Part shown: positions 881 through 42,304 of the stretch, piece by piece
Layout: each line of letters starts with the position of its first letter
How positions within the stretch are numbered: position 1 is the first letter of the stretch
Assembly: GCA_053919585.1 (NCBI GenBank)
Contig: CM132787.1
Source of the DNA: Euprymna scolopes
Lineage: Eukaryota
DNA: 64,000 nucleotides
Direction: 5' to 3' (one strand)
Program-made: the position numbers and the translations under genes
The notes under the pieces: model-generated
The model's input: the letters and a program-made list of their open reading frames with translations, nothing else
What the model was told of the DNA's origin: nothing
The model's database searches: none

Positions 881-1117
881 ATATATATATATATATTACT
901 TCCGACCAAGGCTGACCTCTTAATCCTTAGGTAAAAGAGCGGCATATCTTTTTATTCTCTTTATCTCAACCGAAAACTCTCCTTTACTTTCGACTTAATC
1001 CTCAGGTAAAAAAGTGGCTTATCTTTAAAATTTTTATATTCATATTTTTATTACTTGTCTGATTTTTGATGGTTACCGCAAAAAGTTTGAGGGCGACGGT
1101 GTTGCTACACTGTCTCC

Positions 1118-1268
1118 CCCCTTCCCCAACCACCCATTTTTGCGTACCCCCCAACCACCCCTTTTTGCGTTAATACCCCCCCAACCGCCCCTTTTTGTGT
1201 TACTGCCCCCCCCCATATCAAAGCACCGCCCCTAGGGGGGGCGGTACCGCCCACTTAGGGAAACGATG
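1118..1268. mobile_element. hAT-type terminus with subterminal minisatellite (repeated in every unit)
   Basis: End reads CATCGTTTCCCAAAGTGGGCGGTACCGCCCC on the minus strand in most copies. About three copies of ccccccaaccgcccctttttgcgtta. Flank AGTTAGGA fits the nnnTAnnn hAT target. Confidence 0.55.
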
Positions 1269-2120
1269 AGTTAGGACGTGGCAGGCTTGGCCGAGGCTGC
1301 CTGTGAGCAGTTTGGACGTAATTTGTACGTCTCTCACCACTCCTCCCACGTCCAAAGGAAAAGTTAGCTTCAGTGCCCTGTAAAAAGAAGGATGAATATA
1401 AAGGGGAACCGTACCTTCGCATTTCACTGCTAACTGCTTCAGCGAGGGATGATTCGCTTCTGCCAGTCACACCATTGGGAACGCTACCTTGATCATCTTC
1501 CACAGCGCCTTGGTTCTCTTCCCCTTGTTGGTCCTGACAAAGGTCGTCATTGCCGGGGCGTCTGCAAAATTCATTTCTTCCCCATGATTGTTGTGCATTG
1601 GTTGAGCCTGACCAGCTGTGACCTCTGGTTGCCTTTGAGGTCTGGAAACGGCTGCTGTGAGTCTGGCTCGCATATTTTCTCCCCTGGTAGGAACGGAAGC
1701 TTCTTGGTGTGCTCTGTTCTCGCCGGTGGGTGGGGGGGTTGGCTTCATGATTGGAGGTGCTTCTTCCACCTGCTCATTTTCGTCCGCTATGATGTTCTTG
1801 CGGGCCGAAGAGCTGTGTTCGGTATCGGGAGCCAGTTTGGGGAGAGCGTTCCGTTCATCCTGCATAGTGGATGTAGTTGCAGGGGTTTCAGGAACCTTCC
1901 CCTCCGGCTGGACTTCATGGTTAGTGTCCATCCGAGGGGGGCTGAGCGAGCCTTCTCTTGCCTTCCTCTTCTTGGCCTTTCTCTCTCTCTTGCCTTTGCT
2001 GCTCCCTGAGGCAGGTTCGATTATCTCCTCCTCCTGATCCGGTCTCTTCCTCCGATTCCTGCAGCTTTCTCTTACTTGCGCCGTTGGGAGGAGGATTGTC
2101 TGTATTTTGTTGAGATTGGA
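1269..2120 (-). pseudogene. Tx1/L1 ORF1 C-terminal fragment (also about 2499-3140, 11376-12230, 18620-23300 split by Transib, 31533-32390, 44465-45320)
   Basis: Homologous to 53981-54981 (MTTFVRTNKGKRTKALWK, PLYIHPSFYRALKL), which lies directly upstream of an APE endonuclease ORF2. Confidence 0.8.
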
Positions 2121-2724
2121 TTGTCGCATCGATGGCGAGTGGCCGCTCGAACTCGACTTAGGAGACATTGTGTACAACATGGAGCCGCCATTAGCTCTTT
2201 CTCAGTTAATATATAAAGTTCTAATCTTTGATACAATTCATGACCGTCGTGGTTACACTTTAAGGAATTGACGTTTGTTCCACGGGCTGATTCTGCAGCC
2301 ATCCTGTCATGGAATCCTCCAGAAGTCACAACATCACGTTCTTTTTGTGTTAATTTTGCTTGACGAATCAACCATTTTTGCGTACCCCCCAACCACCCCT
2401 TTTTGCGTTAATACCCCCCCAACCGCCCCTTTTTGTGTTACTGCCCCCCCCCATATCAAAGCACCGCCCCCAGGGGGGGCGGTACCGCCCACTTTGGGAA
2501 ACGATGAGTTAGGACGTGGCAGGCTTGGCCGAGGCTGCCTGTGAGCAGTTTGGACGTAATTTGTACGTCTCTCACCACTCCTCCCACGTCCAAAGGAAAA
2601 GTTAGCTTCAGTGCCCTGTAAAAAGAAGGATGAATATAAAGGGGAACCGTACCTTCGCATTTCACTGCTAACTGCTTCAGCGAGGGATGATTCGCTTCTG
2701 CCAGTCACACCATTGGGAACGCTA

Positions 2725-2782
2725 CACCTCCAATCATGAAGCCAACCCCCCCCGGGGGGGGTTGGCTTCATGATTGGAGGTG
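2725..2782. repeat. Perfect 58-bp palindrome (29-bp arms, no spacer)
   Basis: cacctccaatcatgaagccaacccccccc|ggggggggttggcttcatgattggaggtg. Confidence 0.95.
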
Positions 2783-3350
2783 CTTCTTCCACCTGCTCAT
2801 TTTCGTCCGCTATGATGTTCTTGCGGGCCGAAGAGCTGTGTTCGGTATAGGGAGCCAGTTTGGGGAGAGCGTTCCGTTCATCCTGCATAGTGGATGTAGT
2901 TGCAGGGGTTTCAGGAACCTTCCCCTCCGGCTGGACTTCATGGTTAGTGTCCATCCGAGGGGGGCTGCGCGAGCCTTCTCTTGCCTTCCTCTTTTTGGCC
3001 TTTCTCTCCCTCTTGCCTTTGCTGCTCCCTGAGGCAGGTTCGATTACCTCCTCCTCCTCTGATCCGGTCTCTTCCTCCGATTCCTGCAGCTTTCTCTTAC
3101 TGGCGCCGTTGGGAGGAGGATTGTCTGTATTTTGTTGAGATTGGATTGTCGCATCGATGGCGAGTGGCCGCTCGAACTCGACTTAGGAGACATTGTGTAC
3201 AACATGGAGCCGCCATTAGCTCTTTCTCAGTTAATATATAAAGTTCTAATCTTAGATACAATTCATGACCGGCCGGGCTTTAGTGAGGGCGGTTACAGGG
3301 AGTAAATGGTGGGTTAGTCAAGTATAGCCAACGCCTCGCGTTAGATAAGG

Positions 3351-6300
3351 CTAAGGCAAAGAAGCGTTTAGAGGATAAGAACTAATGACCAGCCGCTCAA
3401 ATCCAAGATCTGTAACACATTTACAATGTAACAGTATTCTGGTATCAGCTTCGTCGTGGTTACACTTTAAGGAATTGACGTTTGTTCCACGGGCTGATTC
3501 TGCAGCCATCCTGTCATGGAATCCTCCAGAAGTCACAACATCACGTTCTTTTTGTGTTAATTTTGCTTGACGAATCAGCTCCATACTCAAGAAGTGTTCT
3601 AAATCTTTTTTGTTCTCTGGGAGGTCAATAAACTGTCTCCAGTTAACAGGTAATGGTAAGTCCGTGTTATTCACTTTGTGACGTATTGGCCGGCTTTTTC
3701 CAATCCGAGAAATTCGAGTGGTATCCTTGATGGTATGTGCTTCATACCGATCAAATACGACATGGACTCTGGAGCATGATTGACTAAAGTGACTAAAGAC
3801 TGCGGTCACAAAATGGTCAGCGAGTTGTCCAAAGTTTTGGATATTTGCAGGTTTTCCAATTGCTTGGACAAGTGCCTGACCATCGATGATCACACAAGTT
3901 TTCAGGTTTGTTATTGGCAGTTGTTTCTCTACAGTTGTTCTTTTCTGGAGAATGTTGCCCAAAGCTGCTTTGTTTGTCGATCGTATTACCCCAGAAGTAT
4001 CTGCGAGTGAAAGTGGAACTGGTGAAAGTTCATAGCTGAGGATTTCCTTTAGGTCAACCTCCCGTCCAGCTTCCTTAGATACAAGCAAGCGTTGGAAGAG
4101 GTTTTGGTCTGCTTTGATAGTCTTTTGCTTGAGGGCTGGATCTTTGCACTGGACTTCATACATGGTTTTTAGGGTTGAGCTTTTCGACTGTCGGAGCTTT
4201 TCATGGAATCCAACAACCTTCTTGATAAGACGTGAAGCCACAAATTCCTGTATTTTCTCTTGTCCTTGTGCGTGTGCTGCCAGATTCTGTAATTTGAAGA
4301 GAAGCTACATCTCGAGTGGCTAGACTAACAACGTTTGGAGTTTGATGTTGAAAGATGCCATAAATCTTCAATTGATCAACAATTTTCTGAACATCTTGCT
4401 TGTCCCGTTTTAGTCTTGAAGGTCCAGCTTCTTTCACATATAAAGAACTATAGTCTTTATCTGCAGTGTGCATGTCCAGCATTAAGTTTGTCTCATGGAC
4501 AATTCTGGTTCGCTCATTAAATGTGAGACACCATTGATCTCTTGCTCCTTCTGATCGTGTTATTCCAACAAGGCCTCCTGCAACTTTACCAACTTTGTTT
4601 ACATGCTCCAAGGCATGATCCGTCGATAGCTGATTGAATGTGTTGTTTGTCGTCTTGACCACAAAGTTTCCATTAATGAACTCATGGTGGACATCAGGGT
4701 GGCTTGTTTCTAGGAGCATGCAATCAAGGTACACTGCTCCCCAGCGGGTGTAATTGACATGGTCATATTGAGCAAACCAGGGTAACATTTTAGCGAAAGA
4801 CGATTTATGCAGGCTCCAGTTTCTGGTTCTCTCAGCACGCAGGAACTGCAGTAAGATGAAAACCATTTTGATGTACGTCAACCAAAATCTGGAAGTTGGT
4901 GGCTGTGTCTCTTGAAAGTCATCCAACAAACTGATGATTCTAGACTGAACATGTTCATCCTCCAGTGCTTTGACGTTGTTGCTGATCACCTCTCGCTGAT
5001 CGTGTGCCTCCAAAGATTCTATGACGTTGACTGATAATGTTTGGATGGCATATTTGTCTACTTGGTGGTCCTGTGCCCATTCGATGAATGTTGGCCAGAG
5101 AATTTTCCATACGGCTTCAAATGTGAGCTTGTGTGCTCGAATCGCCCTGTTGTATGATTTGGCTTGCATGTTGTTCTGAGCTGTGTTCTGACCAAAGACG
5201 GCACTTTCGGCCCATACTTCAAGGAGACCAGAGTCTGCAAAGTGCTTTCCAATGACACACATAAAGTTCTTAATAATGTGGAAACCCCCAAGTCGTAAAA
5301 ATATGTTTTTGCATTGATCACTGTTGGCCCACTGTATTTCCTTGGCTTTGCAATACAGCTGTTGGTCCAAAGTGATGACAGTAGACTGACCAGGATTTAT
5401 AATGCTAGAAATTCTGAGGCATCGCATCATAACCGTCCATAGTGTGTTGTCTTCGTGAGTGGGTGAATTGAGTAGTGGCAAATAACCGATTGTGCAGACC
5501 TCATGTTAGTCTTGAGTTGTAAGTTGGTTGAAACCTGTCCATGCAGGAACATGATCACTGTTAGATCCATGGATTCGAGAAAGAAACCAAGCCATATCTT
5601 TAGCAGAAGCTTCGTTGCACACCTGATCATCTGGTGTAAACATCATTTCCTTCAAGGTGTCTATAAATTTCGGATCCTCGCGACAAGGTCGACAAGGTAA
5701 CTTCTGAAGTTCATGAAGTTCCGGAGGGACTTTCAATGACTTAGATTTCCCAAGAGGAAGAGTGTCCTGCTGTTTCTGTTTGGGTACTACTCTCTGATAC
5801 ACAACCATTTGTGTCGCATGAAATGTTCCCATGCCATCCAATGTTTCTTCAATATTGTCTGCAGCATAATGACAGAACTTGTTTAGTGACACGTTTGATG
5901 GAATAGGCGTGTTTTTATTATCTGCAAACTGTTGCAGATAGTGAACTCCAAGAGTTGTGTCCAGTCTACGCACCTGGTCATAACTGGCACAGTGCCCAGC
6001 GTGATGGACAAGTTCAACGAGCCATTTCGACCGAGTCGCCTGATGAATTGCCAGGCCTAGTCCAACATGTTTTGGTGTAAGCCTTTTACGTTTCGAGACA
6101 GCATAAACAAGGTCTTGACTGATGCTCAATGCGGTCCGTTTCACAAAGTCGTCATCTTCCTCTCTGTCCACTTTCTCTGACAGCATAATACCGAGAAAAA
6201 GAAACAAGCTCTCTGGAATAATTTGTTCTGCATTTTCTTTGCTGACAGATATGCAGTTATCAAGTCCAGGGTGAGATTTTATGTCACTTCTAATGCGTAA

Positions 6301-7296
6301 CGCACAGTGATGCAAAGTTAGCATTGCATCTGTCTCTGATTGTGAGAACTGGGTTTGCTTGAGATTATTCACAAATGTGTTGGTCTCCATTTCCTCAGAT
6401 TTATTTTTCAATGGCTGAACATCAATCTTGGATGACTGTGTAGAAAACAACAGCTGTGGTTGATGTGGATTAAGTTGTGGTACAAAGTATATTTGCCCGG
6501 GAAGAATTTGGTGCAGTTTCTCTTTAAGGCGGAATCTATTATCCCGGTATGATCCAGCTTCAATGCCAAATTCTCTGCGTAAGGAAGAGTACCTATCCCA
6601 AACATCATTCAGCGAATAGATATCATCTTGTGCCAATCCAGTTGACACTTCTGACGCGACTTTGTTAAAGCATATATCTCTGGGCGTTTCAGCTGTAATT
6701 GTATAGGACTTGGATGCTTTTCTATTGAACTCGACATAACACTGAAGATGATACCTGGCATCTGCCGCTACAAGATCAGTAACTCCTGCTAGACGACACT
6801 GCATAACATGGCTCATTTGAGCTCCTTCAAGAATTTTGTCAGAAACTTCAAAAGTTGCAACTAAGTATGTTTCTTTGTTGCTTTTCTTTTGGCAGAAGAT
6901 GCACAAGTCAGTGTTCATAGTGGAAGATTTACTGCGTAATGAAGGTTTTCGTAGTGGACTCTCAGATGCACTGCTTGAGGTAATGGTGCGTTCATACGTT
7001 GTTCTGAGCCGTGTTAGTTTTAAGGAACTTGTGAAGGTAGAATAACAGTGTTTGTGATTGATGACTTTAATCTCTTTAATGATTTTCTCAAAATCAATGG
7101 CTTGAATTCTTTCTATAGTGCGGAAGTTTTCAGAATCCTTGTACTTCTTGCGTTCTGCAGCAGCTATGCGGGCCCTTTGAATTCCAACCTCTCCAAGATT
7201 TCTAATAGGTTTCTTTGAGTCTTTCTTCTGACAAAAAAGGCATAGGGTCCAATCAATACTTGTACCGGAAGACATCTGAGGGCTCTGGGTGCTCAC
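3351..7296 (-). pseudogene. Academ transposase/XPG-like nuclease pseudogene (ORFs 5506-7296, 4201-5481, 3351-4241)
   Basis: CxxC...YHxxCY, ADNI, TLDQQLY, LGGFH, DHxNY, DHALEH, then PIN/XPG-like DGQA, VFDRY, HDEADTR. Contains a stop and a frameshift, and is truncated before the DTD and Cys-rich motifs seen in family 2. Confidence 0.75.
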
Positions 7297-8378
7297 ACTC
7301 TACTCCATATTGAAGCTCAGCTCAACTCAGAACATGCTGTTGGAGAATAAGAACAAATAAAAATTATGCAAATTAGCACATTATCATACTCTAAAGAACA
7401 CTAGCTTAACTAATCAAATGTGTTCATGCTTTATTTTTTTTAATATCTATTAAACTCATAAACAACATCTACAGCGAATGGCACTATCATCTTTCCCTTT
7501 CTCATGGAAAAAAATGAAGAAAGATAACAAAATGGCAGTACCCGATACACGGACACTAGTGGGAGCCAACAGATAATGATAATAACTTATTATATATTAC
7601 ATTCATCACATATATAAACTTCTTATACATAGATTAAGTACAAGTGAATACAATAAAAGATTTTAAGAAAATCATTTTTCGCTTTGGCAGCCATTTTGTT
7701 TTTTTGCAATAATTATCTTCCAAACTAGGCAAAGAACCCCACCAAATTCTTTGGAGAACTTAAATAATCATATAGTTGATGCTATAAAAAAGAAGTTTTA
7801 TGACAATTGAATGAGATGTATTTTCTCTATACTGACCGTAAGCGTCTTACGTCTAAAAATTAATTTTTTTTTTTTGGGGGGGGCTCCTTTTGGTTGAACA
7901 AAATATTTTTCTATTCAATATAGAGTTAAAATAATTAAATATTTGGATTATACAGTCTCTAAATGTTTTACCTACCAAATTTCAGAAATATTGAATTTGT
8001 GGAAGTATTTTTTAAAAATTTAGATAACATTGAAATTTTGTGACGTTTCATGGCTTAAATTTAGTAGCCAAATATGCAAACTTTACACCCTCCTAAAATC
8101 TGAACCATAACGTTTACAACCAAATAATTTAGCAAATCATCTTAACTCTCCAAGAGGAAATTTTGTGCCAATTTTCAAGTAATTCGGAGTTAGTGGGTGT
8201 AATTGCCAGGTGAATTGAGATAGAATGACCCAATGAAGTTCATCAGAAATTTGGCTAAAAAGTGATAATAAAATCATTTTAAATGTATAAAAATATGGAA
8301 TTCTTACTAAACAAAGTTTAATATACATCACAAATATTATCTCCAATTACAGCAAATTTCATAACATTATCTCAAATA

Positions 8379-9781
8379 CAGGGTGCGGCATAAATAACGC
8401 CCTTTCTTAATATCCTTTTTTTCTTTATAATATGAATGCAATTTAAAGATAAATAAAAGTAAAAGGTATATCTCAAATTTATTAAATATCTAATTCAATA
8501 TCCACATTGGTGATCTTTACAGTAATGATCTTCTGAACTAAAAAAACGATTTTTGGGAGCAAAATTAGTCAATAAATATAAAATCAAAATAAATTTAATG
8601 AAAAAAAGGATACCAACTTTATTAACTTTAAAATTTAACGCAGATGTTCAAAATGTTCTCCATCATGTTCCATACAATTTTGAACTCTACCAGCGACACT
8701 TTTACAAACATTTTTACACTCTTCAATGGTAATTTCATGAAATTTATCTGAAATTGCATTTTTTAATTCCTGAATTGTTTTCGGCTTAAGATTGTAAACT
8801 TTATCTTTTAATATACCCCACAAAAAAAAGTCTGGTAGCGTTAAGTCCGGAGATCGTGATGGCCATTCAATTGGTCCCCTTCGTCCTATCCAACTATCTT
8901 CAAAATTTTCATTTAACCATTCCCTAACTCTTAACCCATAATGTGGTGGAGCCCCATCCTGTTGTAAAAAAATATCAGTCTGATTTTCAACTCTTGGCCA
9001 AACTTCCGTTTGAAGCATATGCAAATAATTATTTTGATTCACAGTACCCTCGAAGAATATTGGCCCTATTAATCCCATACAAGAAATGGCAGCCCAAACT
9101 GTTACTCCTGGCGAATTAACATCCTTTTCCAAGATGATATGAGGATTCTCATTACTCCAATACACACAATTATGGCGATTGATATGCCCATTTAACTTAA
9201 AGGTTGCTTCATCTGACCACCATATCTTTTCAAGGAAAGTTATATCTTCATTAACTTTATTCAAAAAGATTTCACAAAATTGTAATTGTCTATCTTGATC
9301 TCCATCATGCAAACTTTGAAGAACACGTGGAATGTAAGATCTCATCTTTAGCTTCTTCAATATTCTGCGAACACTCCTATCACTGATTGCTAACTCTGTA
9401 GAAAGACGTCTACTGGATTTTTGAGGAGTATGCAGCAACGATTCTTGTAGTTCATTGGACTTTTCTAAGCTCGTTGCGACAACTGGCCTTCCGGATCTTT
9501 GAGCATCCCTTACACTTCCTGTGGATTCAAATTTTTTAATCAAGCTTTTGATATTTCGGCTTTGCACTCTTGGGATGTCATATTCATCTGATAACAATCT
9601 TGCAGTTTTAGCACCATTATTATTATTTTGATAATACAATTGTATTGCTTTTACTCTCTGTTCAATTGTTAATCTCATGGTTTAAAAAATACCTGAAAAA
9701 AATAAATGTTTAAGAATTAGTTAAAGAAAATATACATAAATATAATAAGATATAAAAGGGCGTTATTTATGCCGCACCCTG
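8379..9781 (-). mobile_element. Tc1/mariner DD41D (rosa/VS-like) element, full length
   Basis: 27-bp TIR CAGGGTGCGGCATAAATAACGCCCTTT and TA target duplication. Empty site ctcaaaTAgat in units B and D. Confidence 0.93.
8635..9678 (-). CDS. DD41D transposase, 347 aa, intact
   Basis: N-terminal HTH with GRP; WWSDEATF, QQDGAPPH, SPDLTLPDFFLWG; 41 residues between the second and third D. Confidence 0.92.
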   Translation of the reverse strand: MRLTIEQRVKAIQLYYQNNNNGAKTARLLSDEYDIPRVQSRNIKSLIKKFESTGSVRDAQRSGRPVVATSLEKSNELQESLLHTPQKSSRRLSTELAISDRSVRRILKKLKMRSYIPRVLQSLHDGDQDRQLQFCEIFLNKVNEDITFLEKIWWSDEATFKLNGHINRHNCVYWSNENPHIILEKDVNSPGVTVWAAISCMGLIGPIFFEGTVNQNNYLHMLQTEVWPRVENQTDIFLQQDGAPPHYGLRVREWLNENFEDSWIGRRGPIEWPSRSPDLTLPDFFLWGILKDKVYNLKPKTIQELKNAISDKFHEITIEECKNVCKSVAGRVQNCMEHDGEHFEHLR

Positions 9782-9994
9782 TAGATATGGAGCTATGTCA
9801 CATTATAATAGTACTGTATTTTCAACCATGGCGGCCATTTTGTTTTTGTTCTAAAAAATTATTAAAGGCCTAATTGAATGGGCATCCTCCTGAAAAACCT
9901 TCAGTATGGACCCCTCTAACAGTCTGACATGAATGCTTGCTCCTAACATTCCGTACCCCCTAAAGTGAATTTTCAAGATTTTGCCTCCTGACTA

Positions 9995-10975
9995 CAATAT
10001 CAAACTGGATAAATGCAGCCTTGCTCTTGTTGGGTATCCTGTTAAACCAGTTAATCGTATCCTCAGTGTTGACCCATTGGGTAAGGTTAAATTTCTTTTT
10101 TATTTGGTTGTTAATTCTTTCGAGGATCCTTTTACTTATTTTTCCGATTTCCGGTTTGGTGGGGTTAATAAGTCTGGTTTGGGGTTTAGTCTCGAAGTGT
10201 TCTTTGTGGTCTTTAAGGAGGAGGTATGCACTTTTTGTTTGGAGCTTGGAGACTCTATCGCTCAAGTTAGGGTGTCTGTAATGGTTTTACTGTCCAAATT
10301 TATATCCTTAATCATGTTGATTTTGGATTTTTTATATGTGGCGGTGAGGTTGTTATTTAGGAGTTTTATGTATCTCTGTTTGGAGATCTTATAAAAATTT
10401 TGAGATTTATCCGCCTTAACATATATTAGTTTGGATGTATTAATATCTTTTTTTTTATTTTGTCTAAATGTTGTTGGAACTGGTTTTTGTGTTTACGGAA
10501 GGATATGTTGTTTATAATGTCCGTAAGAGCCGTTTCAAATTTCGCCAATTGCTCTATGTGTGGAGCTGTGCTCTTGTTGCTGAATCCATAATATTCGGTG
10601 GTATTTATAGGATTTTTGTCCTTAAGAAAGAAGTAGGCCTTCCAGCGCATCTTCCTAGTAAGTTCCTCCATTCTTCTTATTAGGTTGAGAAGGTAGTCAT
10701 TTTTTGGTGTTGTCGGGATGTTTTTGAGGGATAGGTTGAAATTAACTTTTTCCATTTCTTGTAAAGGTATAATCCAAGTTTTTTATGGAGAGTGCTCAAC
10801 CGTGAAGGAGCATATATTTCTTTTCAAGAGAAATAAGGTAAAAAAAACCCAATAAAAGTACTCGATATGTTAATAAAGCTGTATATAATTTTTTATTGAG
10901 CCCGTAATAATTTTACATTACTGTTTCCATTGGATTTTCACCCCAGGAGATGAGGTAGAGTACCAATTAAAAGAT
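9995..10975 (-). mobile_element. Penelope-like RT 5' fragment (unit B; also 17439-18205, 30141-31120, 43084-44055)
   Basis: KDHKEHF...RLINPTKPEIGKISK...QWVNT...WF...FIQFDIV (RT motif) cut by the Academ terminus; frameshifted. Confidence 0.75.
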
Positions 10976-12460
10976 ATATATATATATATTACTTCCGACC
11001 AAGGCTGACCTCTTAATCCTTAGGTAAAAGAGCGGCATATCTTTTTATTCTCTTTATCTCGACCGAAAACTCTCCTTTACTTTCGACTGGGGCTGACCCC
11101 TTAATCCTCAGGTAAAAAAGTGGCTTATCTTTAAAATTTTTATATTTATATTTTTATTACTTGTCTGATTTTTGATGGTTACCGCAAAAAGTTTGAGGGC
11201 GACGGTGTTGCTACACTGTCTCCCCCCTTCCCCAACCACCCATTTTTGCATCCCCCCCAACCGCCCCTTTTTGCGTTAATGCCCCCCCAACCGCCCCTTT
11301 TTGAGTTACTGCCCCCCCCCCCATATCTAAGCACCGCCCCCAGGGGGGCGGTACCGCCCACTTTGGGAAACGATGAGTTAGGACGTGGCAGGCTTGGCCG
11401 AGGCTGCCTGTGAGCAGTTTGGACGTAATTTGTACGTCTCTCACCACTCCTCCCACGTCCAAAGGAAAAGTTAGCTTCAGTGCCCTGTAAAAAGAAGGAT
11501 GAATATAAAGGGGAACCGTACCTTCGCATTTCACTGCTAACTGCTTCAGCGAGGGATAATTCGCTTCTGCCAGTCACACCATTGGGAACGCTACCTTGAT
11601 CATCTTCCACAGCGCCTTGGTTCTCTTCCCCTTGTTGGTCCTGACAAAGGTCGTCATTGCCAGGGCGTCTGCAAAATTCATTTCTTCCCCATGATTGTTG
11701 TGCATTGGTTGAGCCTGACCAGCTGTAACCTCTGGTTGCCTTTGAGGTCTGGAAACGGCTGCTGTGAGTCTGGCTCGCATATTTTCTCCCCTGGTAGGAA
11801 CGGAAGCTTCTTGGTGTGCTCTGTTCTCGCCGGTGGGGGTGGGGGGGTTGGCTTCATGATTGGAGGTGCTTCTTCCACCTGCTCATTTTCGTCCGCTATG
11901 ATGTTCTTGCGGGCCGAAGAGCTGTGTTCGGTATCGGGAGCCAGTTTGGGGAGAGCGTTCCGTTCATCCTGCATAGTGGATGTAGTTGCAGGGGTTTCAG
12001 GAACCTTCCCCTCCGGCTGGACTTCATGGTTAGTGTCCATCCGAGGGGGGCTGCGCGAGCCTTCTCTTGCCTTCCTCTTCTTGGCCTTTCTCTCCCTCTT
12101 GCCTTTGCTGCTCCCTGAGGCAGGTTCGATTACCTCCTCCTCTGATCCGGTCTCTTCCTCCGATTCCTGCAGCTTTCTCTTACTGGCGCCGTTGGGAGGA
12201 GGATTGTCTGTATTTTGTTGAGATTGGATTGTCGCATCGATGGCGAGTGGCCGCTCGAACTCGACTTAGGAGACATTGTGTACAACATGGAGCCGCCATT
12301 AGCTCTTTCTCAGTTAATATATAAAGTTCTAATCTTAGATACAATTCATGACCGGCCGGGCTTTAGTGGGGGCGGTTACAGGGAGTAAATGGTGGGTTAG
12401 TCAAGTATAGCCAACGCCTCGCGTTAGATAAGGCTAAGGCAAAGAAGCGTTTAGAGGATA

Positions 12461-17438: not shown

Positions 17439-18206
17439 CAATATCAAACTGGATAAATGCAGCCTTGCTCTTGTTGGGTATCCTGTTAAACCAGTTAATC
17501 GTATCCTCAGTGTTGACCCATTGGGTAAGGTTAAATTTCTTTTTTATCTGGTTGTTAATTCTTTCGAGGATCCTTTTACTTATTTTTCCGATTTCCGGTT
17601 TGGTGGGGTTAATAAGTCTGGTTTGGGGTTTAGTCTCGAAGTGTTCTTTGTGGTCTTTAAGGAGGAGGTATGCACTTTTTGTTTGGAGCTTGGAGACTCT
17701 ATCGCTCAAGTTTAGGGTGTCTGTAATGGTTTTACTGTCCAAATTTATATCCTTAATCATGTTGATTTTGGATTTTTTATATGTGGCGGTGAGGTTGTTA
17801 TTTAGGAGTTTTATGTATTTCTGTTTGGAGATCTTATAAAAATTTTGAGATTTATCCGCCTTAACATATATTAGTTTGGATGTATTAATATCTTTTTTTT
17901 ATTTTGTCTAAATGTTGTTGGAACTGGTTTTTGTGTTTATGGAAGGATATGTTGTTTATAATGTCCGTAAGATCCGTTTCAAATTTCGCCAATTGCTCTA
18001 TGTGTGGAGCTGTGCTCTTGTTGCTGAATCCATAATATTCGGTGGTATTTACAGAATTTTTGTCCTTAAGAAAGAAGTAGGCCTTCCAGCGCATCTTCCT
18101 AGTAAGTTCCTCCATTCTTCTTATAAGGTTGAGAAGGTAGTCATTTACATTACTGTTTCCATTGGATTTTCACCCCAGGAGATGAGGTAGAGTACCAATT
18201 AAAAGT

Positions 18207-18237
<31 letters not shown>

Positions 18238-19568
18238 CTTCAGACCAAGGCTGACCTCTTAATCCTTAGGTAAAAGAGCGGCATATCTTTTTATTCTCTT
18301 TATCTCGACCGAAAACTCTCCTTTACTTTCGACTGTGGCTGATCCCTTAATCCTCAGGTAAAAAAGTGGCTTATCTTTAAAATTTTTATATTTATATTTT
18401 TATTACTTGTCTGATTTTTGATGGTTACCGCAAAAAGTTTGAGGGTGACGGTGTTGCTACACTGTCTCCCCCCTTCCCCAACCACCCATTTTTGCGTCCC
18501 CCCCAACCGCCTCTTTTTGCGTTAATGCCCCCCCAACCGCCCCTTTTTGAGTTACTGCCCCCCCTGATATCAAAGCACCGCCCCCAGGGGGGCGGTACCG
18601 CCCACTTTGGGAAACGATGAGTTAGGACGTGGCAGGCTTGGCCGAGGCTGCCTGTGAGCAGTTTGGACGTAATTTGTACGTCTCTCACCACTCCTCCCAC
18701 GTCCAAAGGAAAAGTTAGCTTCAGTGCCCTGTAAAAAGAAGGATGAATATAAAGGGGAACCGTACCTTCGCATTTCACTGCTAACTGCTTCAGCGAGGGA
18801 TGATTCGCTTCTGCCAGTCACACCATTGGGAACGCTACCTTAATCATCTTCAACAGCGCCTTGGTTCTCTTCCCCTTGTTGGTCCTGACAAAGGTCGTCA
18901 TTGCCGAGGCGTCTGCAAAATTCATTTCTTCCCCATGATTGTTGTGCATTGGTTGAGCCTGACCAGCTGTGACCTCTGGTTGCCTTTGAGGTCTGGAAAC
19001 GGCTGCTGTGAGTCTGGCTTGCATATTTTCTCCCCTGGTAGGAACGGAAGCTTCTTGGTGTGCTCTGTTCTCGCCGGTGGGGGGGGGCACAGTGGGCCCA
19101 GATGGCCAATGTTTGGAAATAGAGGTGAAGCATCATCACAAATGACTTTTATAAGATTTTTTTCAAAACTTTTGAGGCATATGATCAACTTGGGTTCATT
19201 TTAATTAGATTTTAACTGATATTTGTCTCTGAAAACAGTTCTGGGACCAAATTGACCTATTTTGGCTGTGTCACAAAATGTCGCGAATTTACTGAAATTT
19301 ACTAAATTCAGAGAAATATTTAAATAGGCATTATTTCAGTTTGGATTGAGATAGGAAAGTGGTTGAGAGCTTGTTAGAAGCGTATGGCCAAGGAGAACAT
19401 AATGGAAGCAATTCATGTTGAGCTAATATACCAGTTTATGTATTGGCTTTTATAAAGTAATGAATCTGTCTGAAATTGTGTATTTCTGTTGAAAATTGCA
19501 CAGGTAACAATACAAACATTATGTGTATTATTGAATTTTCTCAAAACCTCACATAAAGATAATATAAA

Positions 19569-19683
19569 TTAATCAAGAAAAATGTCTTCAATAAGGCTTG
19601 CATACCAGTTCTTGGACAAGCCAAACAACCGATTATGTGAACATATGGCACACTGGCCCCAGATCGCCAAACTTTGGAAATAG
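19569..19683 (-). pseudogene. Diverged transposase C-terminus fused to an internal TIR-like end
   Basis: Encodes SHNRLFGLSKNWYASLIEDIFLD versus SHGRLVGLPKRWYASLVEDIFLD; abuts CACACTG-19bp-TGGAAATAG at 19649-19683. Confidence 0.85.
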
Positions 19684-19968
19684 AGATTAGGCGAAGTCTT
19701 ACTTTGATTTTTCTGGCATTTTCTCGTTTTTTTTTTCAGTTTTATACCCAAGTACAGAGTAACTAAAGCATACTTTGACTTAGAGAAAGTGTATAAAAGG
19801 ATACAGGAACCAAAAATGCTTTGATTTTGTCTAAATTCACGAAATTAGGAGAAATTATAAAATTGGAGTAGTTTCGTTGACTCAACCGAGATAATTCAGT
19901 TTGTGTTATGTTTCTCATTCCATACTGGCAGATAAGAATATAAAATAAAACAACAAATAAATCACCAT

Positions 19969-22149
19969 CTAGTCAAGAAAAATGTCTTCAACGAGGCTTG
20001 CATACCATCGCTTCGGTAGACCTACCAACCGACCATGCGACCGAATGGTGTGATCGTCAGCTCCACATTCCGTGCAAAATTTTCTTGCCTGAAAATGAGT
20101 GGTTATGTTCTGGATGATTGGATCTGATCGTTCCAGTAACCTGGCCATTACATCAGTTAATTGGAGCAGTGGGTCAGTTTTCCTCGACAAGAACTGCAAG
20201 TAGTTGCGAATGTCTTTGTTGTTTGACTCTAAGCATTCCTCTGACAGACTTCCCAGTCCATGAGCATCATTTAGACTCATCAATTCTGTTGAATGATGAA
20301 GAGTCCCATGCAAGGTGTGATTCATCATGACCCATGGGAAGTTGTCACACAAATTGTATGAAGTCTGCTCACAAAGTTCTTTGAACTTCATCAGATCGAT
20401 CTTACGTGACGACGACACAACCGATAGAACAGTGGAGAGCTGACGATGAAGGAGAAGCAGGTTTTCTCGGTGTTTTTCCTCAACTAATTTTTCGATTGAA
20501 GCTAGAACTTCCTCTGAAAAGAAGCGACGGCCTTGTGGACCATTGGTTGATGTCCCACCTTTTCCACCAGCAGAGTTGACTCTATCAAGATACAGGCCTG
20601 TCTCTGTGTAGATCGCTTCGAGAACTCGATCCTTCGCTCGACGGACAGGTTCACCACGAACGTCGGACCTCTCAATCCACTGTTGGTAGTCAGCATGGCA
20701 CCGATACAAAACCTTCAGGAACCACGTTGTTCCATTGATGTACGAATGAGTCACAGTGATGCTTGATTGGTCAGATGTTGTGAGTGGCTTCTTGGTTAAT
20801 CCTTGACGAGTCTCAAAATCTCCTTGTTTTGCTTTGACTTTACCATTCTCATCAACTAGTTCATTGTACAGCTCGAGAGAATTCTTTGCTGATCTGTTAA
20901 TGGGAAAGCCCTCTGCAACCTTGGTTCTGTCAGTCCAATCAGCCTGTTTTGTTGTGCATAGGATGCAATCAGCCCCTCCCAACCCTGAAATGTCCCTTTT
21001 GAATTTCAGATCCTTCATTGAATCGTGTACTATGACATTCACATCATATCCTTGACCATCAGCAGTAACAAAAATTCCATCTGAAGCCAACTCTTGGCGT
21101 GCTTTGTCTGTAGTGGGAACGACCATATTAAGAAGATCTTCATCGGTCTCTTTCTCCCTGATCAAGAATAGTGGTCTTAATGTTCTACAGTTGTTTGGCG
21201 AGTGATTCTGCCACAGACAAAAAAAAGAACCGTCCTGGTAACGAGCAAGTAGTTTCAGTGGTGTAATGCCATACTGGAACATATTTTCAGTTGCGTCCAG
21301 CATACTTGTAGAGTTCCACACTACTTGTTGACCAGCACCGTCACATCCATCTTTAAACACCATTTCAAGGACACCATCTCTGCATTTATCTTTTATGATT
21401 TTCTTAGGGATCAAGGATATGATGGACTCGATCGTCATTTTCACTAGGTCCTTGTACTGCACCTGAACTCCACTGTCATCAAGAACTGGGGAGATACTGG
21501 GGCGGAGCTTTTTACGTCCCTCCAACAACTCATTGCTGGTTGGAAAATAGATTCCCTTCGCAGCAAGTATGTGCCTCATCTTTCTCATTTGCTCCCTACT
21601 CAACGTTAATGAATGCATCAATGCAATCGCTTCATTGATCTCAAAGGAATGAATATCGTTCACATTGGACGAAAATATCTCATACCCAACTCGAGCTGTC
21701 TTCTTTTCCGATTGAATATTCACACGATGAATCATATATCCTAGCAACTGAGTGACTGAAAGCTCAGGACATTCCTTTGCAGCGTATTCTTCAATGTAGT
21801 CGAGCAGACCCTGTGTTCTTTCCTTCTGCATTCTCTCCCCTAAGTTGACAAAACTCTTCCTTTGCTTCTTTCCAACTTGTGGACAGTTCCCTTCCATTTC
21901 GATTTCTTCTTTCGATGCTTGAGCAAGGATTTCGGTGTTTGCTAGGCGTTTCTTTTTCAATCGTTTGAAATGGTTCCATGCATTCAAGAAGAAGCCACTG
22001 ATTTCTTTGTTTTCGTGAAAACCATGAGTTTCTCTGAATTGGCGAAAGCATTTGGCATATTCAGGTGGTTTGGTACGGCATAATGCAGCCTGACTAATGA
22101 TGGCTTTGAAGACCTGATATTCTGTGGTGAGAACATTGTTGCCTGCCAT
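19969..22149 (-). CDS. RAG1-like (Transib superfamily) DDE transposase, 726 aa, uninterrupted
   Basis: KDGCDGAG (RAG1 KESCDGMG, D600), MKDLK...CILC (D708 and CxxC), HTLHGTLHH...SEECLESNNK (HKTLAH...SEGNESGNK, E962), WQNHSPNNCRTLRPL, C-terminal CxxCx4Hx4H. Confidence 0.88.
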   Translation of the reverse strand: MAGNNVLTTEYQVFKAIISQAALCRTKPPEYAKCFRQFRETHGFHENKEISGFFLNAWNHFKRLKKKRLANTEILAQASKEEIEMEGNCPQVGKKQRKSFVNLGERMQKERTQGLLDYIEEYAAKECPELSVTQLLGYMIHRVNIQSEKKTARVGYEIFSSNVNDIHSFEINEAIALMHSLTLSREQMRKMRHILAAKGIYFPTSNELLEGRKKLRPSISPVLDDSGVQVQYKDLVKMTIESIISLIPKKIIKDKCRDGVLEMVFKDGCDGAGQQVVWNSTSMLDATENMFQYGITPLKLLARYQDGSFFCLWQNHSPNNCRTLRPLFLIREKETDEDLLNMVVPTTDKARQELASDGIFVTADGQGYDVNVIVHDSMKDLKFKRDISGLGGADCILCTTKQADWTDRTKVAEGFPINRSAKNSLELYNELVDENGKVKAKQGDFETRQGLTKKPLTTSDQSSITVTHSYINGTTWFLKVLYRCHADYQQWIERSDVRGEPVRRAKDRVLEAIYTETGLYLDRVNSAGGKGGTSTNGPQGRRFFSEEVLASIEKLVEEKHRENLLLLHRQLSTVLSVVSSSRKIDLMKFKELCEQTSYNLCDNFPWVMMNHTLHGTLHHSTELMSLNDAHGLGSLSEECLESNNKDIRNYLQFLSRKTDPLLQLTDVMARLLERSDPIIQNITTHFQARKFCTECGADDHTIRSHGRLVGLPKRWYASLVEDIFLD

Positions 22150-25100
22150 CTGAATATGATAATTTCTTTTTTTTAAACTTCAGTTAACCCGATAATAGCC
22201 TGTAATGAAGAAAAAAGCATAGACATTAACTGAATGGTCATATAGAATAATAGAATACTCAAAATATTTGATAGAACATGTAAAAGCAAACTAAAACTTT
22301 GGCAAAATGCCCGAATTTGGTAATTTGGTCCCAGATCCCGGAAAAATGAAAATTCTATTTGTCAGAAAAAAAAATTTACTGCTAAGATTTACAAAACAAA
22401 TTTGACATAGTTAGAAAGGTCTTAGGCTATATTTTTTGAAACATATATACTTTGATATGTAAATCTTAGCGGTTTTTGAGCTATTTGAGGAATTGAACAA
22501 AAAATAAATGACAATTTTGCTGAAACATTAAGGTAAAATTTCACTAAATAAGCTTTTATCTTATCAAAATTTCATCTATTATACCACAAACAAGACCTGT
22601 TAGAAAAAAAAGATGAATTTAGTTATACAAATTGAAAAAATAACATCAAAAAACCCATTATGGCATTTTATTTACAAATTCTGGCTTAGTTTATATGATA
22701 AGGTTCATATGTAGTCAAGAATATGATCTCGACACGATTTTGAATTTCCGCTAGGTTTGAGATAGCATAAAATCACTTCACGTGATGCTACAGACCTAAT
22801 TTTTTTTTTGTTTGTTCAGAAATTTTATTTACTTACAGAATTTCTATAGTTCAAGGTACATAGAGAAAGTTTTTTTTTAGGCTATTTCCACCTCTGGGCC
22901 CACTGTGGGGGGGGGGTTGGCTTCATGATTGGAGGTGCTTCTTCCACCTGCTCATTTTCGTCCGCTATGATGTTCTTGCGGGCCGAAGAGCTGTGTTCGG
23001 TATCGGGAGCCAGTTTGGGGAGAGCGTTCCGTTCATCCTGCATAGTGGATGTAGTTGCAGGGGTTTCAGGAACCTTCCCCTCCGGCTGGACTTCATGGTT
23101 AGTGTCCATCTGAGGGGGGCTGCGCGAGCCTTCTCTTGCCTTCCTCTTCTTGGCCTTTCTCTCCCTCTTGCCTTTGCTGCTCCCTGAGGCAGGTTCGATT
23201 ACCTCCTCCTCTGATCCGGTCTCTTCCTCCGATTCCTGCAGCTTTCTCTTACTGGCGCCGTTGGGAGGAGGATTGTCTGTATTTTGTTGAGATTGGATTG
23301 TCGCATCGATGGCGAGTGGCCGCTCGAACTCGACTTAGGAGACATTGTGTACAACATGGAGCCGCCATTAGCTCTTTCTCAGTTAATATATAAAGTTGTA
23401 ATCTTAGATACAATTCATGACCGGCCGGGCTTTAGTGGGGGCGGTTACAGGGAGTAAATGGTGGGTTAGTCAAGTATAGCCAACGCCTCGCGTTAGATAA
23501 GGCTAAGGCAAAGAAGCGTTTAGAGGATAAGAACTAATGACCAGCCGCTCAAATCCAAGATCTGTAACACATTTACAATGTAACAGTATTCTGGTATCAG
23601 CTTCGTCGTGGTTACACTTTAAGGAATTGACGTTTGTTCCACGGGCTGATTCTGCAGCCATCCTGTCATGGAATCCTCCAGAAGTCACAACATCACGTTC
23701 TTTTTGTGTTAATTTTGCTTGACGAATCAGCTCCATACTCAAGAAGTGTTCTAAATCTTTTTTGTTCTCTGGGAGGTCAATAAACTGTCTCCAGTTAACA
23801 GGTAATGGTAAGTCCGTGTTATTCACTTTGTGACGTATTGGCCGGCTTTTTCCAATCCGAGAAATTCGAGCGGTATCCTTGATGGTATGTGCTTCATACC
23901 GATCAAATACGACATGGACTCTGGAGCATGATTGACTAAAGTGACTAAAGACTGCGGTCACAAAATGGTCAGCGAGTTGTCCAAAGTTTTGGATATTTGC
24001 AGGTTTTCCAATTGCTTGGACAAGTGCCTGACCATCGATGATCACACAAGTTTTCAGGTTTGTTATTGGCAGTTGTTTCTCTACAGTTGTTCTTTTCTGG
24101 AGAATGTTGCCCAAAGCTGCTTTGTTTGTCGATCGTATTACCCCAGAAGTATCTGAAAGTGGAACTGGCGAAAGTTCATAGCTGAGGATTTCCTTTAGGT
24201 CAACCTCCCGTCCAGCTTCCTTAGATACAAGCAAGCGTTGGAAGAGGTTTTGGTCTGCTTTGATAGTCTTTTGCTTGAGGGCTGGATCTTTGCACTGGAC
24301 TTCATACATGGTTTTTAGGGTTGAGCTTTTCGACTGTCGGAGCTTTTCATGGAATCCAACAACCTTCTTGATAAGACGTGAAGCCACAAATTCCTGTATT
24401 TTCTCTTGTCCTTGTGCGTGTGCTGCCAGATTCTGTAATTTGAAGAGAAGCTACATCTCGAGTGGCTAGACTAACAACGTTTGGAGTTTGATGTTGAAAG
24501 ATGCCATAAATCTTCAATTGATCAACAATTTTCTGAACATCTTGCTTGTCCCGTTTTAGTCTTGAAGGTCCAGCTTCTTTCACATATAAAGAACTATAGT
24601 CTTTATCTGCAGTGTGCATGTCCAGCATGTAGTTTGTCTCATGGACAATTCTGGTTCGCTCATTAAATGTGAGACACCATTGATCTCTTGCTCCTTCTGA
24701 TCGTGTTATTCCAACAAGGCCTCCTGCAACTTTACCAACTTTGTTTACATGCTCCAAGGCATGATCCGTCGATAGCTGATTGAATGTGTTGTTTGTCGTC
24801 TTGACCACAAAGTTTCCATTAATGAACTCATGGTGGACATCAGGGTGGCTTGTTTCTAGGAGCATGCAATCAAGGTACACTGCTCCCCAGCGGGTGTAAT
24901 TGACATGGTCATATTGAGCAAACCAGGGTAACATTTTAGCGAAAGACGATTTATGCAGGCTCCAGTTTCTGGTTCTCTCAGCACGCAGGAACTGCAGTAA
25001 GATGAAAACCATTTTGATGTACATCAACCAAAATCTGGAAGTTGGTGGCTGTGTCTCTTGAAAGTCATCCAACGAACTGATGATTCTAGACTGAACATGT

Positions 25101-28100: not shown

Positions 28101-28524
28101 GTCTCTAAATGTTTTACCTACCAAATTTCAGAAATATTGAATTTGTGGAAGTATTTTTTAAAAATTTAGATAACATTGAAATTTTGTGACGTTTCATGGC
28201 TTAAATTTAGTAGCCAAATATGCAAACTTTACACCCTCCTAAAATCTGAACCATAACGTTTACAACCAAATAATTTAGCAAATCATCTTAACTCTCCAAG
28301 AGGAAATTTTGTGCCAATTTTCAAGTAATTCGGAGTTAGTGGGTGTAATTGCCAGGTGAATTGAGATAGAATGACCCAATGAAGTTCATCAGAAATTTGG
28401 CTAAAAAGTGATAATAAAATCATTTTAAATGTATAAAAATATGGAATTCTTACTAAACAAAGTTTAATATACATCACAAATATTATCTCCAATTACAGCA
28501 AATTTCATAACATTATCTCAAATA

Positions 28525-32900: not shown

Positions 32901-33440
32901 TCCGTGTTATTCACTTTGTGACGTATTGGCCGGCTTTTTCCAATCCGAGAAATTCGAGCGGTATCCTTGATGGTATGTGCTTCATACCGATCAAATACGA
33001 CATGGACTCTGGAGCATGATTGACTAAAGTGACTAAAGACTGAGGTCACAAAATGGTCAGCGAGTTGTCCAAAGTTTTGGATATTTGCAGGTTTTCCAAT
33101 TGCTTGGACAAGTGCCTGACCATCGATGATCACGCAAGTTTTCAGGTTTGTTATTGGCAGTTGTTTCTCTACAGTTGTTCTTTTCTGGAGAATGTTGCCC
33201 AAAGCTGCTTTGTTTGTTGATCGTATTACCCCAGAAGTATCTGCGAGTGAAAGTGGAACTGGTGAAAGTTCATAGCTGAGGATTTCCTTTAGGTCAACCT
33301 CCCGTCCAGCTTCCTTAGACACAAGCAAGCGTTGGAAGAGGTTTTGGTCTGCTTTGATAGTCTTTTGCTTGAGGGCTGGATCTTTGCACTGGCCTTCATA
33401 CATGGTTTTTAGGGTTGAGCTTTTCGACTGTCGGAGCTTT

Positions 33441-36167: not shown

Positions 36168-36293
36168 AGTGGAAGATTTACTGCGTAATGAAGGTTTTCG
36201 TAGTGGACTCTCAGATGCACTGCTTGAGGTAATGGTGCGTTCATACGTTGTTCTGAGCCGTGTTAGTTTTAAGGAACTTGTGAAGGTAGAATA

Positions 36294-42200: not shown

Positions 42201-42304
42201 TGAAAGTGATTATCTATGATGACCTCCAACACATACAAGTGAAAAATCAATTTTGGCAAAATTTCTGAAGTAGCTATTAATTAATGACAAATGCCCCCTG
42301 ACTA
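36294..42304 (-). mobile_element. Academ (AcademX-type) family 2, full-length 6011 bp, nested in family 1
   Basis: Imperfect TIRs of about 100 bp starting TAGTCAGGG(A/G)GCA(G/T)TTGTCAT; 3-bp TSD ATA (empty site gtagaATAacag). Confidence 0.85.
36988..41966 (-). pseudogene. Academ transposase + XPG-like nuclease + Cys-rich finger, about 1650 aa, two frameshifts (ORFs 40890-41966, 40674-40868, 36988-40686)
   Basis: AIDNID, LDGDLY, LGSLH, DHAIEQ, IIDAM, VFDQY, EEGDQ, DTDVFV, GTDNT; C-terminal CSC..C...CGC....C...CGC. Confidence 0.8.

What the first reader, a model, noticed from the sequence alone, without database searches (positions are those of the whole stretch)
2725..2782. Perfect palindrome centred on the Transib target site: candidate hairpin/P-nucleotide excision footprint
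Seen: a spacer-less 29-bp-arm palindrome whose axis is the same G-run that holds the Transib in unit C. The right arm equals the Transib right flank (G8 here, G9 at 22908), and about 245 bp of the opposite flank is missing. Known: RAG/Transib cleavage seals flanking DNA as hairpins, and off-centre opening yields palindromic P nucleotides. Inference: a germline coding-joint-like scar from excision of this element.
Basis: partly seen in the sequence, partly recalled or inferred. Interest (0 to 1): 0.8.

Follow-up and report, generated by a model that had tools for sequence, protein, structure and literature searches.

The report
Possible Transib excision scar: 58-bp palindrome
A perfect 58-base mirror-image sequence sits at the same G-run where a recently active RAG1-like (Transib) jumping gene lies in a neighbouring repeat unit. 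It is best, but not conclusively, read as the scar of a DNA hairpin made when such an element was cut out and the break was patched.

Summary
Positions 2725-2782 form a perfect, spacer-less palindrome with 29-bp arms, the only complex one in the window. Its right arm is identical to the first 29 bases right of the Transib at 19088-22907, apart from G8 versus G9.

The palindrome is the right-hand end of a patchwork (1732-2754) of three unit fragments joined at 1-5-nt microhomologies. So "245 bp missing" is only one way to describe the locus.

About 21 other near-identical (99-100%) full-length or nearly full-length Transib copies show the family was recently mobile. Published work shows that Transib, RAG and hAT enzymes seal flanking DNA as hairpins, and that Ac/Ds scars can carry palindrome arms of up to 20 nt with microhomology.

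Limits:
- No independent reads confirm the palindrome. Logan contigs leave 2638-2754 uncovered, and no run was listed for the junction words.
- No allele shows a Transib at this exact site.
- Unit SNPs are a gene-conversion mosaic and cannot decide the history.
- A 29-nt arm far exceeds normal P nucleotides.

My odds: hairpin excision scar about 0.5, transposase-independent template switching or end joining at a fragile G-run about 0.3, artefact about 0.1.

The scan holds one other, untested note (s1-275098) of a 50-nt palindrome at a truncated Transib end elsewhere in this genome.

The parts
2754..2782 (+). Right arm of the palindrome. This is the resident start of repeat unit U1 (G8 TTGGCTTCATGATTGGAGGTG) and continues collinearly into the unit.
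   Evidence: Positions 2754-14718 align to 22909-34883, and the arm is identical to 22909-22937.
2725..2753 (+). Left arm: an inverted copy of 2754-2782. The outermost C (2725) is shared with the end of segment A', giving a 1-nt microhomology.
2366..2725 (+). Patch A': a 360-bp copy of unit segment A, which normally lies 246 bp upstream of the G-run. It is closest to the neighbouring A0 (1128-1487). Only 2 real differences remain once the junction bases are set aside.
2245..2370 (+). Patch D: a 126-bp copy of unit segment D (= 3452-3577). It is joined to C by the microhomology CG (2245-2246) and to A' by a junction of 5 nt or less.
1732..2246 (+). Patch or remnant C0f: the first 515 bp of a unit head, following tail T0 across a G3-T-G7 run (1728-1738). 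It carries about 5 private changes.
19088..22907 (+). Transib element, 3820 bp, with CACAGTG...CACTGTG ends. Its flanks are G9 (19079-19087) and G9 (22908-22916), which fits a 5-bp GGGGG target-site duplication in a G13 target. A 726-aa RAG1-like ORF lies at 19969-22149 on the minus strand.
   Evidence: Pfam RAG1 7e-13; HzTransib structure 6pqn 7e-27. About 21 other near-identical copies genome-wide.
11835..11847 (+). Intact ('empty') paralogous site, G5-T-G7. The same state occurs at 31992-32004 and 44924-44936.
11595..11840 (+). Segment B (246 bp) in an intact unit. This is the stretch absent between A' and the palindrome.

Best explanation
The palindrome is a fossil of a covalently closed DNA hairpin on the right-hand flank of a double-strand break in the G-run. 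The break was most likely made when a Transib element, of the same young family that now sits in the sister unit, was excised from this site.

Inferred steps:
1. The RAG1-like transposase nicked at the element end, and the flank 3'-OH attacked the opposite strand. This sealed the flank G8TTGG... as a hairpin.
2. A host nuclease opened the hairpin 29 nt from the tip, not 1-2 nt. This distance suits an MRN/CtIP-type cut better than an Artemis-type cut.
3. Unfolding gave a tail that carried the inverted copy.
4. The tail was joined through one base of microhomology to a left end. That left end had been lost or re-synthesised in several template-switching steps, producing patches C, D and A' with 2-5-nt microhomologies.

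Shown: the sequence anatomy, the paralogous coincidence, and the youth and type of the Transib family. Inferred: that a Transib was ever at this site, the hairpin itself, and which nuclease opened it. How the element came to be here (duplicated with the unit, an independent insertion, or a local hop to or from the 19088 site) cannot be decided.
For: - The palindrome is perfect, spacer-less and flush, and unique in the window and in 153 kb of other loci.
- Its axis is 8 nt from TTGG, against 9 nt for the Transib boundary in the sister unit.
- Both of these G-runs lack the T that all four other copies of the site carry (three intact units and the T0/C0f junction at 1728-1738).
- Only about 5 G/C runs of 7 or more exist per unit. 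Only 2 of 29 family insertions have an all-G/C 5-mer directly upstream of the left end. The coincidence is therefore not explained by a general G-run preference of the family.
- The Transib has a RAG1-like 726-aa ORF and about 21 other copies at 99-100% identity.
- Fourteen other C8G8 sites sampled in the genome have arms of only 8-11, i.e. just the homopolymers.
- Literature: Transib, hAT and RAG make flank hairpins (PMC5499845, PMC4840297). Ac/Ds scars in yeast have palindrome arms of up to 20 nt and mostly show microhomology (PMC5873905).
Against: - There is no filled allele or orthologue for this exact site.
- The palindrome is not seen in independent data.
- A 29-nt arm is longer than any P tract I could document (PMC2193825, PMC5873905).
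- The arm is G8, not G9, so a 1-nt homopolymer change or a different insertion register must be assumed.
- No trace of the left-flank hairpin or of a target-site duplication can be read in a homopolymer.
- SNP phylogeny gives no specific link.
- The surrounding microhomology patchwork is equally typical of replication-based rearrangement.
Confidence: 0.5

Rival explanations
1. This is a transposase-independent rearrangement at a fragile G-run. Replication stalling or a spontaneous break in the G13 tract was repaired by microhomology-mediated template switching (MMBIR/FoSTeS) or polymerase-theta end joining. One switch copied 28 nt of the opposite strand. The homopolymer end allowed a flush C8G8 join, for example through a few untemplated G's pairing with the C-tail of a sister end.
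For: - Three neighbouring junctions show 2-5-nt microhomology, and the patches come from the same unit.
- There is 1-nt microhomology at the palindrome.
- The 246-bp gap lies in the 50-300-bp range of G4-induced, Pol-theta-repaired deletions, which sometimes carry templated inserts (PMC4654259).
- The G-rich site is indel-prone in dispersed paralogues.
- No evidence places a Transib at this site.
Against: - In G4 scars the junction lies at the 3' edge of the G motif and the G tract is lost (PMC4654259). Here the G-run is fully retained and the gap lies 5' of it.
- A template switch has no reason to return at exactly the base where the inverted copy ends (zero spacer, zero overlap), and the C8 3' end has no microhomology for that return. 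This is my reasoning from the sequence.
- The rival requires coincidence with the Transib boundary in the sister unit, roughly 1 in 5 even if both processes seek G/C runs.
Confidence: 0.3
2. This is an assembly or library artefact: a fold-back chimera or mis-join in a tandem array of 97-99% identical units. The palindrome does not exist in the animal's DNA.
For: - No independent contig covers 2638-2754.
- No run was listed for the 86 junction-specific bases.
- The locus lies in a difficult tandem array.
Against: - Fold-back chimeric reads give arms as long as the read, not 29 bp followed by a different unit segment. Overlap assemblers do not join on 1 nt.
- The neighbouring patches carry their own variants (C0f has about 5 private changes) and clean microhomology junctions, as real evolved sequence does.
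- k-mer contigs are expected to clip a 58-bp palindrome as a tip, so their silence is uninformative.
Confidence: 0.1
3. This is a hairpin scar left by a different hairpin-forming transposon (hAT or MULE type) that once sat in this G-run. It is unrelated to the Transib in the sister unit.
For: It has the same hairpin logic as the best explanation. hAT and MULE enzymes also seal flanks as hairpins (PMC5499845).
Against: No such element lies in any paralogous copy of the site. hAT scars are centred on the complement of the base next to the element rather than flush (PMC5873905). It leaves the coincidence with the Transib boundary unexplained.
Confidence: 0.05

Closest known systems
Ac/Ds (hAT) excision footprints with palindromic (P-type) insertions
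   Same: Both show an inverted duplication of flanking DNA that begins at the element/flank boundary, microhomology at the final joint, and a deletion on the other side. In yeast, arms of 3 nt or more occur in 47% of scars and reach 20 nt (PMC5873905).
   Different: The candidate element here is a Transib, not a hAT. The arm is 29 nt, longer than the reported maximum. The palindrome is flush, not centred on the complement of the adjacent base. It is a germline fossil without a known filled allele.
V(D)J coding joints with long P nucleotides (Artemis- or DNA-PKcs-deficient cells)
   Same: The enzyme family is the same (RAG1-like) and the chemistry is nick-hairpin. Off-centre opening gives palindromic additions, often with a large deletion on the partner end (PMC2193825).
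   Different: Normal P tracts are 1-2 nt, and 1-7 nt in Artemis-null ES cells. 29 nt implies a different opening activity. This is a germline transposon donor site, not a lymphocyte receptor locus.
G-quadruplex-induced, polymerase-theta-repaired deletions (C. elegans dog-1/FANCJ)
   Same: One junction lies at a G-rich motif and the other 50-300 bp away. Microhomology is minimal, and templated inserts occur occasionally (PMC4654259).
   Different: In those deletions the G tract itself is removed and the fixed junction is at its 3' edge. Here the G-run is retained, the gap lies on its 5' side, and the insert is a flush inverted copy.
Multi-step template switching or filler DNA at break repair (aborted SDSA, MMBIR/FoSTeS)
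   Same: Patches of 126-515 bp copied from nearby homologous sequence are joined at 2-5-nt microhomologies.
   Different: Such events do not by themselves predict a spacer-less palindrome at the terminal junction.

Membership tests
Hairpin-derived transposon excision footprint (Transib/RAG/hAT type) | An inverted duplication of the flank that starts exactly at the element/flank boundary, with no spacer | tested here: met
   Perfect 29+29 palindrome. The axis is 8 nt from TTGG, against 9 nt for the Transib boundary in the sister unit, a 1-nt offset inside a homopolymer.
Hairpin-derived transposon excision footprint (Transib/RAG/hAT type) | Independent evidence that the element occupied this very site (a filled allele, orthologue or haplotype) | tested here: inconclusive
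   Only a paralogous unit carries the element. Public runs gave no informative contigs. SNP trees are a mosaic.
Hairpin-derived transposon excision footprint (Transib/RAG/hAT type) | A candidate element that encodes a nick-hairpin DDE transposase and was recently mobile | tested here: met
   A 726-aa ORF matches Pfam RAG1 (7e-13) and the HzTransib structure 6pqn (7e-27). About 21 other copies are 99-100% identical. The hairpin chemistry itself comes from the literature (PMC5499845, PMC4840297).
Hairpin-derived transposon excision footprint (Transib/RAG/hAT type) | Both copies of the target-site duplication retained around the scar | tested here: inconclusive
   The target is a G homopolymer. 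A GGGGG duplication cannot be told apart from run-length change.
Hairpin-derived transposon excision footprint (Transib/RAG/hAT type) | Palindromic tract length within the documented range | tested here: not met
   The arm is 29 nt. Documented lengths are 1-2 nt normally, 1-7 nt in Artemis-null cells (PMC2193825), and at most 20 nt for Ac/Ds in yeast (PMC5873905).
G4 / polymerase-theta deletion scar | Fixed junction at the 3' edge of the G motif, with loss of the G tract | tested here: not met
   G8 is retained. The missing 246 bp lie 5' of the run. The criterion is from PMC4654259.
G4 / polymerase-theta deletion scar | Second junction 50-300 bp away, minimal microhomology, optional templated insert | tested here: met
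   246 bp are missing relative to A', there is a 1-nt microhomology, and the 28-nt insert is templated but inverted.
Replicative template-switch rearrangement (MMBIR/FoSTeS) | Microhomology at every switch point | tested here: not met
   Microhomology is present at C>D (CG), D>A' (5 nt or less) and A'>inverted arm (C). There is none possible at the return switch on the palindrome axis, where the 3' end is C8 (and reasoning from the sequence).
Fold-back chimera / assembly artefact | Inverted arms that extend for read-scale lengths, or a join without biological junction features | tested here: not met
   The arm stops at 29 bp and passes into a different unit segment. The neighbouring junctions have microhomology and private variants.
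Tandem duplication by alternative (sister-chromatid) transposition | The element lies at the junction of two equally old direct copies, with a footprint at the outer boundary | tested here: not met
   The layout fits: footprint at 2754, Transib at 19088-22907, period 20155. But copy-to-copy substitution divergence ranges from 0.15% to 1.8%. The tails T2 and T4 differ at 15 of about 900 sites, against 4 of about 900 for T1 and T3. The Transib left flank also lacks the T of the presumed target.

The most novel reading that the evidence does not exclude
The palindrome and the Transib are two ends of one event. In a sister-chromatid ('alternative') transposition by a Transib, the hairpinned right flank of one sister was joined to the left flank, giving the scar at 2754. 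The element, still attached to the other sister, inserted 16.3 kb downstream. This would create the layout L-footprint-[U1 U2]-Transib-[U3 U4], a roughly 20-kb tandem duplication. It would be the first case of transposase-driven segmental duplication by a RAG-family element. So far this is known only for hAT elements such as Ac/Ds (my recollection, not checked in a paper here).
Probability: 0.07. Interest if true: 0.8.

Novelty: new member of a known kind. Interest (0 to 1): 0.5.

Why it matters
The nick-hairpin chemistry of Transib is known from purified enzyme and from its relationship to RAG1. Natural germline donor-site scars of Transib elements are, as far as my searches showed, not documented.

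A confirmed scar would be in-vivo evidence for flank hairpins made by a live Transib in a cephalopod. Its 29-nt arm would say something about how an invertebrate germline opens such hairpins, far from the tip. It would also show how messy the accompanying repair can be.

The same genome offers an intact, young family of about 22 full-length or nearly full-length copies on which excision could be tested directly. If the scar is not confirmed, the locus is still a clean example of a multi-junction microhomology rearrangement at a G-run.

Tried and rejected
1. Read-level confirmation. Logan contigs of runs X1, X2, X3 and X9, laid on 1000-4500, leave 2638-2754 uncovered. One X2 contig shows only the ordinary B|C form, 1733>2755. 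A second run search with only the junction-specific 86 nt listed none.

2. SNP grouping.
- A' groups with the adjacent A0, not with the Transib unit. Two of its four 'differences' are junction bases.
- The right flank is 2-4 substitutions from three units alike.
- Divergence along the 20-kb repeat is mosaic, 0.15-1.8%.
- I therefore dropped the idea that phylogeny could show whether the Transib predates the duplication.

3. Sister-chromatid transposition model. It is attractive on layout but disfavoured by unequal divergence and by the T-less left flank. I kept it only as the novel case.

4. 'Fold-backs are common at G-runs'. C8G8 occurs 48 times in the genome, but 14 other sampled sites have arms of only 8-11. 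Rejected as far as sampled.

5. 'G-runs are the family's usual target'. Only 2 of 29 left ends follow an all-G/C 5-mer. Rejected.

6. Cryptic-heptamer cleavage at the GTG inside G5-T-G7. This would give C6G6, not C8G8. Rejected on sequence.

7. Polymerase-theta snap-back on the C8 3' tail. There is no complementary G stretch in that strand. Rejected as a simple route.

8. Looking for the other reported Transib-end palindrome. I guessed it might sit at the truncated copy on C22 and searched a pattern for it, with no match. I did not try to obtain them another way.

Full report
**What is in the sequence.**
Positions 2725-2782 read CACCTCCAATCATGAAGCCAAC8 followed by G8TTGGCTTCATGATTGGAGGTG. This is a perfect palindrome with 29-bp arms and no spacer. 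It is the only perfect palindrome with arms of 8 or more in the window that is not an (AT)n tract. Nothing comparable occurs in 153 kb of other loci fetched from the same genome. Chance cannot produce it.

**Context.**
The window is G000:C5:21204001-21268000 of a 5.9-Gb animal genome. Other notes of this scan call it a squid- or cuttlefish-type mollusc, which I did not test. The window holds a tandem array of units of about 7-9 kb that are 97-99% identical and occur only here. Elsewhere in the genome relatives are at most 80% identical. Each unit carries long minus-strand ORFs of a multi-copy eukaryotic family, some of whose relatives have DUF6589.

I name the unit segments from an intact unit:
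- A = 11234-11594
- B = 11595-11840
- the G-run = G5-T-G7 at 11835-11847
- C = 11841-12354
- D = 12535-12660

Intact G-runs also lie at 31992-32004 and 44924-44936.

**The Transib.**
Positions 19088-22907 form a 3820-bp element with CACAGTG...CACTGTG ends. It lies between G9 (19079-19087) and G9 (22908-22916). This is what a 5-bp GGGGG target duplication in a G13 run would give. Its 726-aa ORF matches Pfam RAG1 (7e-13) and the solved Helicoverpa Transib transposase 6pqn (7e-27). The genome holds about 21 other full-length or nearly full-length copies at 99-100% identity, so the family was mobile recently. Literature: Transib target duplications are invariably 5 bp, and the enzyme uses a nick-hairpin mechanism (PMC4840297, PMC5499845).

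**The coincidence.**
The right arm 2754-2782 is the resident start of unit U1, and the alignment runs on for 12 kb (2754-14718 = 22909-34883). The arm is identical to the 29 bases right of the Transib. The axis lies 8 nt from TTGG, and the Transib boundary lies 9 nt from it. Both of these G-runs lack the T that all four other copies of the site carry, namely the three intact units and the T0/C0f junction at 1728-1738.

A unit has only about 5 G/C runs of 7 or more. Only 2 of 29 exact left ends of this family follow an all-G/C 5-mer. So the family does not generally seek G-runs. A second, unrelated event landing in the same run is therefore a real coincidence, roughly 1 in 5 at best.

**The locus is more complex than a 245-bp deletion.**
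Reading rightwards, the order is:
- tail T0 with A0 (1128-1487) and B0
- a G3-T-G7 run (1728-1738)
- C0f (1732-2246)
- D (2245-2370)
- A' (2366-2725)
- the inverted arm
- U1

The junctions are C>D with the microhomology CG, D>A' with 5 nt or less, and A'>arm with one C.

Two descriptions fit equally well:
1. About 1 kb of templated filler was inserted at a two-ended break between T0 and U1.
2. The region is the remnant of a former unit with three microhomology deletions of 180 bp, about 6-7 kb, and 246 bp plus the inverted 28 nt.

In both, the palindrome is the right-hand terminus of a multi-step repair whose right end lay at the G-run.

A' is nearest to the adjacent A0. Two real differences remain, both private to A0. 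C0f has about 5 private changes. The event is therefore not brand new. Within wide error its age resembles the U1/U3 divergence (0.47% substitutions overall). It also resembles the spread I estimate within the Transib family from the bit scores.

**Mechanism.**
A flush, spacer-less inverted copy is what a covalently closed hairpin gives when it is nicked away from its tip and unfolded. Nicking 29 nt from the tip, followed by unfolding, yields a tail ending ...GGAGGTG-3'. Its last G pairs with the C at the end of A', which is exactly the 1-nt microhomology seen. This part is inference.

The length is the weak point:
- P nucleotides are normally 1-2 nt, and 1-7 nt in Artemis-null cells (PMC2193825).
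- Ac/Ds scars in yeast reach 20-nt arms, and 85-100% of them show microhomology (PMC5873905).
- From my own knowledge, not tested here, an MRN/CtIP-type endonuclease cuts some 15-30 nt from blocked ends and would suit the distance.

**Rivals.**
G4 or polymerase-theta scars share three features: a 50-300-bp gap, minimal microhomology and templated inserts (PMC4654259). But they delete the G tract and fix the junction at its 3' edge. Here the run is retained.

Replicative template switching explains the patchwork. It does not explain why the inverted copy ends at exactly the base where normal sequence resumes. The C8 3' end also offers no microhomology for that return. A contrived route exists for a homopolymer end, with a few untemplated G's pairing with a sister's C tail.

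An assembly fold-back chimera would have read-length arms, not 29 bp.

**Tests that failed or were uninformative.**
Logan contigs from four runs leave 2638-2754 uncovered. The junction-only search listed no run. Contig builders clip such palindromes, so this is no evidence of absence, but the palindrome remains unconfirmed outside the assembly.

Phylogeny cannot tell whether the Transib predates the duplication of the [U1 U2] pair:
- Substitution divergence between the two copies runs 0.65%, 0.15%, 0.4% and 1.24%, then 1.1-1.8%.
- Tails T2 and T4 differ at 15 of about 900 sites, against 4 for T1 and T3.

This mosaic also speaks against the otherwise tidy idea that a sister-chromatid transposition made the 20,155-bp period.

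C8G8 is 24 times commoner than G8C8 in the genome (48 against 2). The 14 other sites I could read are just abutting homopolymers.

**Other notes of this scan.**
One untested note (s1-275098) reports a 50-nt palindrome at a truncated Transib end elsewhere in this genome. If it holds, it would make hairpin fossils a recurring feature. My one guess at its location found nothing.

**Verdict.**
The hairpin-scar reading is the best single explanation at about 0.5, but it rests on a paralogous coincidence and on mechanism, not on a filled allele or on reads. It would be a new member of a known kind: the hairpin-type excision footprints known for hAT elements and V(D)J joints, here attributed to a Transib and unusually long.

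Noticed in passing
whole genome (G000); e.g. L031-L045: CCCCCCCCGGGGGGGG occurs 48 times in the genome, while GGGGGGGGCCCCCCCC occurs only twice. Several of the C8G8 sites belong to shared repeat families whose copies begin with a G-run. The cause of the asymmetry is unknown.
   Followed up: partly
window 18200-19087: The unit tail directly left of the Transib (T2) carries 9 private substitutions in its last 900 bp or so, 6 of them C>T or G>A, plus a private 212-bp deletion further upstream. Its sister tails are much cleaner. This may reflect methylation spreading from the element or error-prone repair.
   Followed up: no
window 8378-9782 (ORF 8635-9678, minus strand): A Tc1/mariner-type element (DDE_3, HTH_Tnp_Tc3_2, DUF4817) is inserted in the long units U1 and U3 but not in the short ones. 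The region around it is the least diverged part of the array, at 0.15%.
   Followed up: partly
window 36293-42452: A roughly 6.1-kb insertion replaces about 0.9 kb in unit U4 relative to U2. Its content was not examined.
   Followed up: no
window 3351-7296, minus strand (ORFs of 296, 426 and 596 aa): The repeat unit encodes long ORFs of a multi-copy eukaryotic family without a Pfam domain. Some relatives carry DUF6589. The best database hit is 80% identical. The unit is probably a transposon-derived gene or element in tandem.
   Followed up: partly
G000:C46:132755148-132755176: The only other copy of this Transib family whose left end follows an all-G/C 5-mer sits after CCCCC. So 2 of 29 insertions lie in G/C homopolymers.
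   Followed up: no
window 11234-11375 and paralogues: The first 140 bp or so of segment A contain 30-bp periodic C-runs. They match a separate dispersed short repeat at 86-90% identity on many chromosomes.
   Followed up: no
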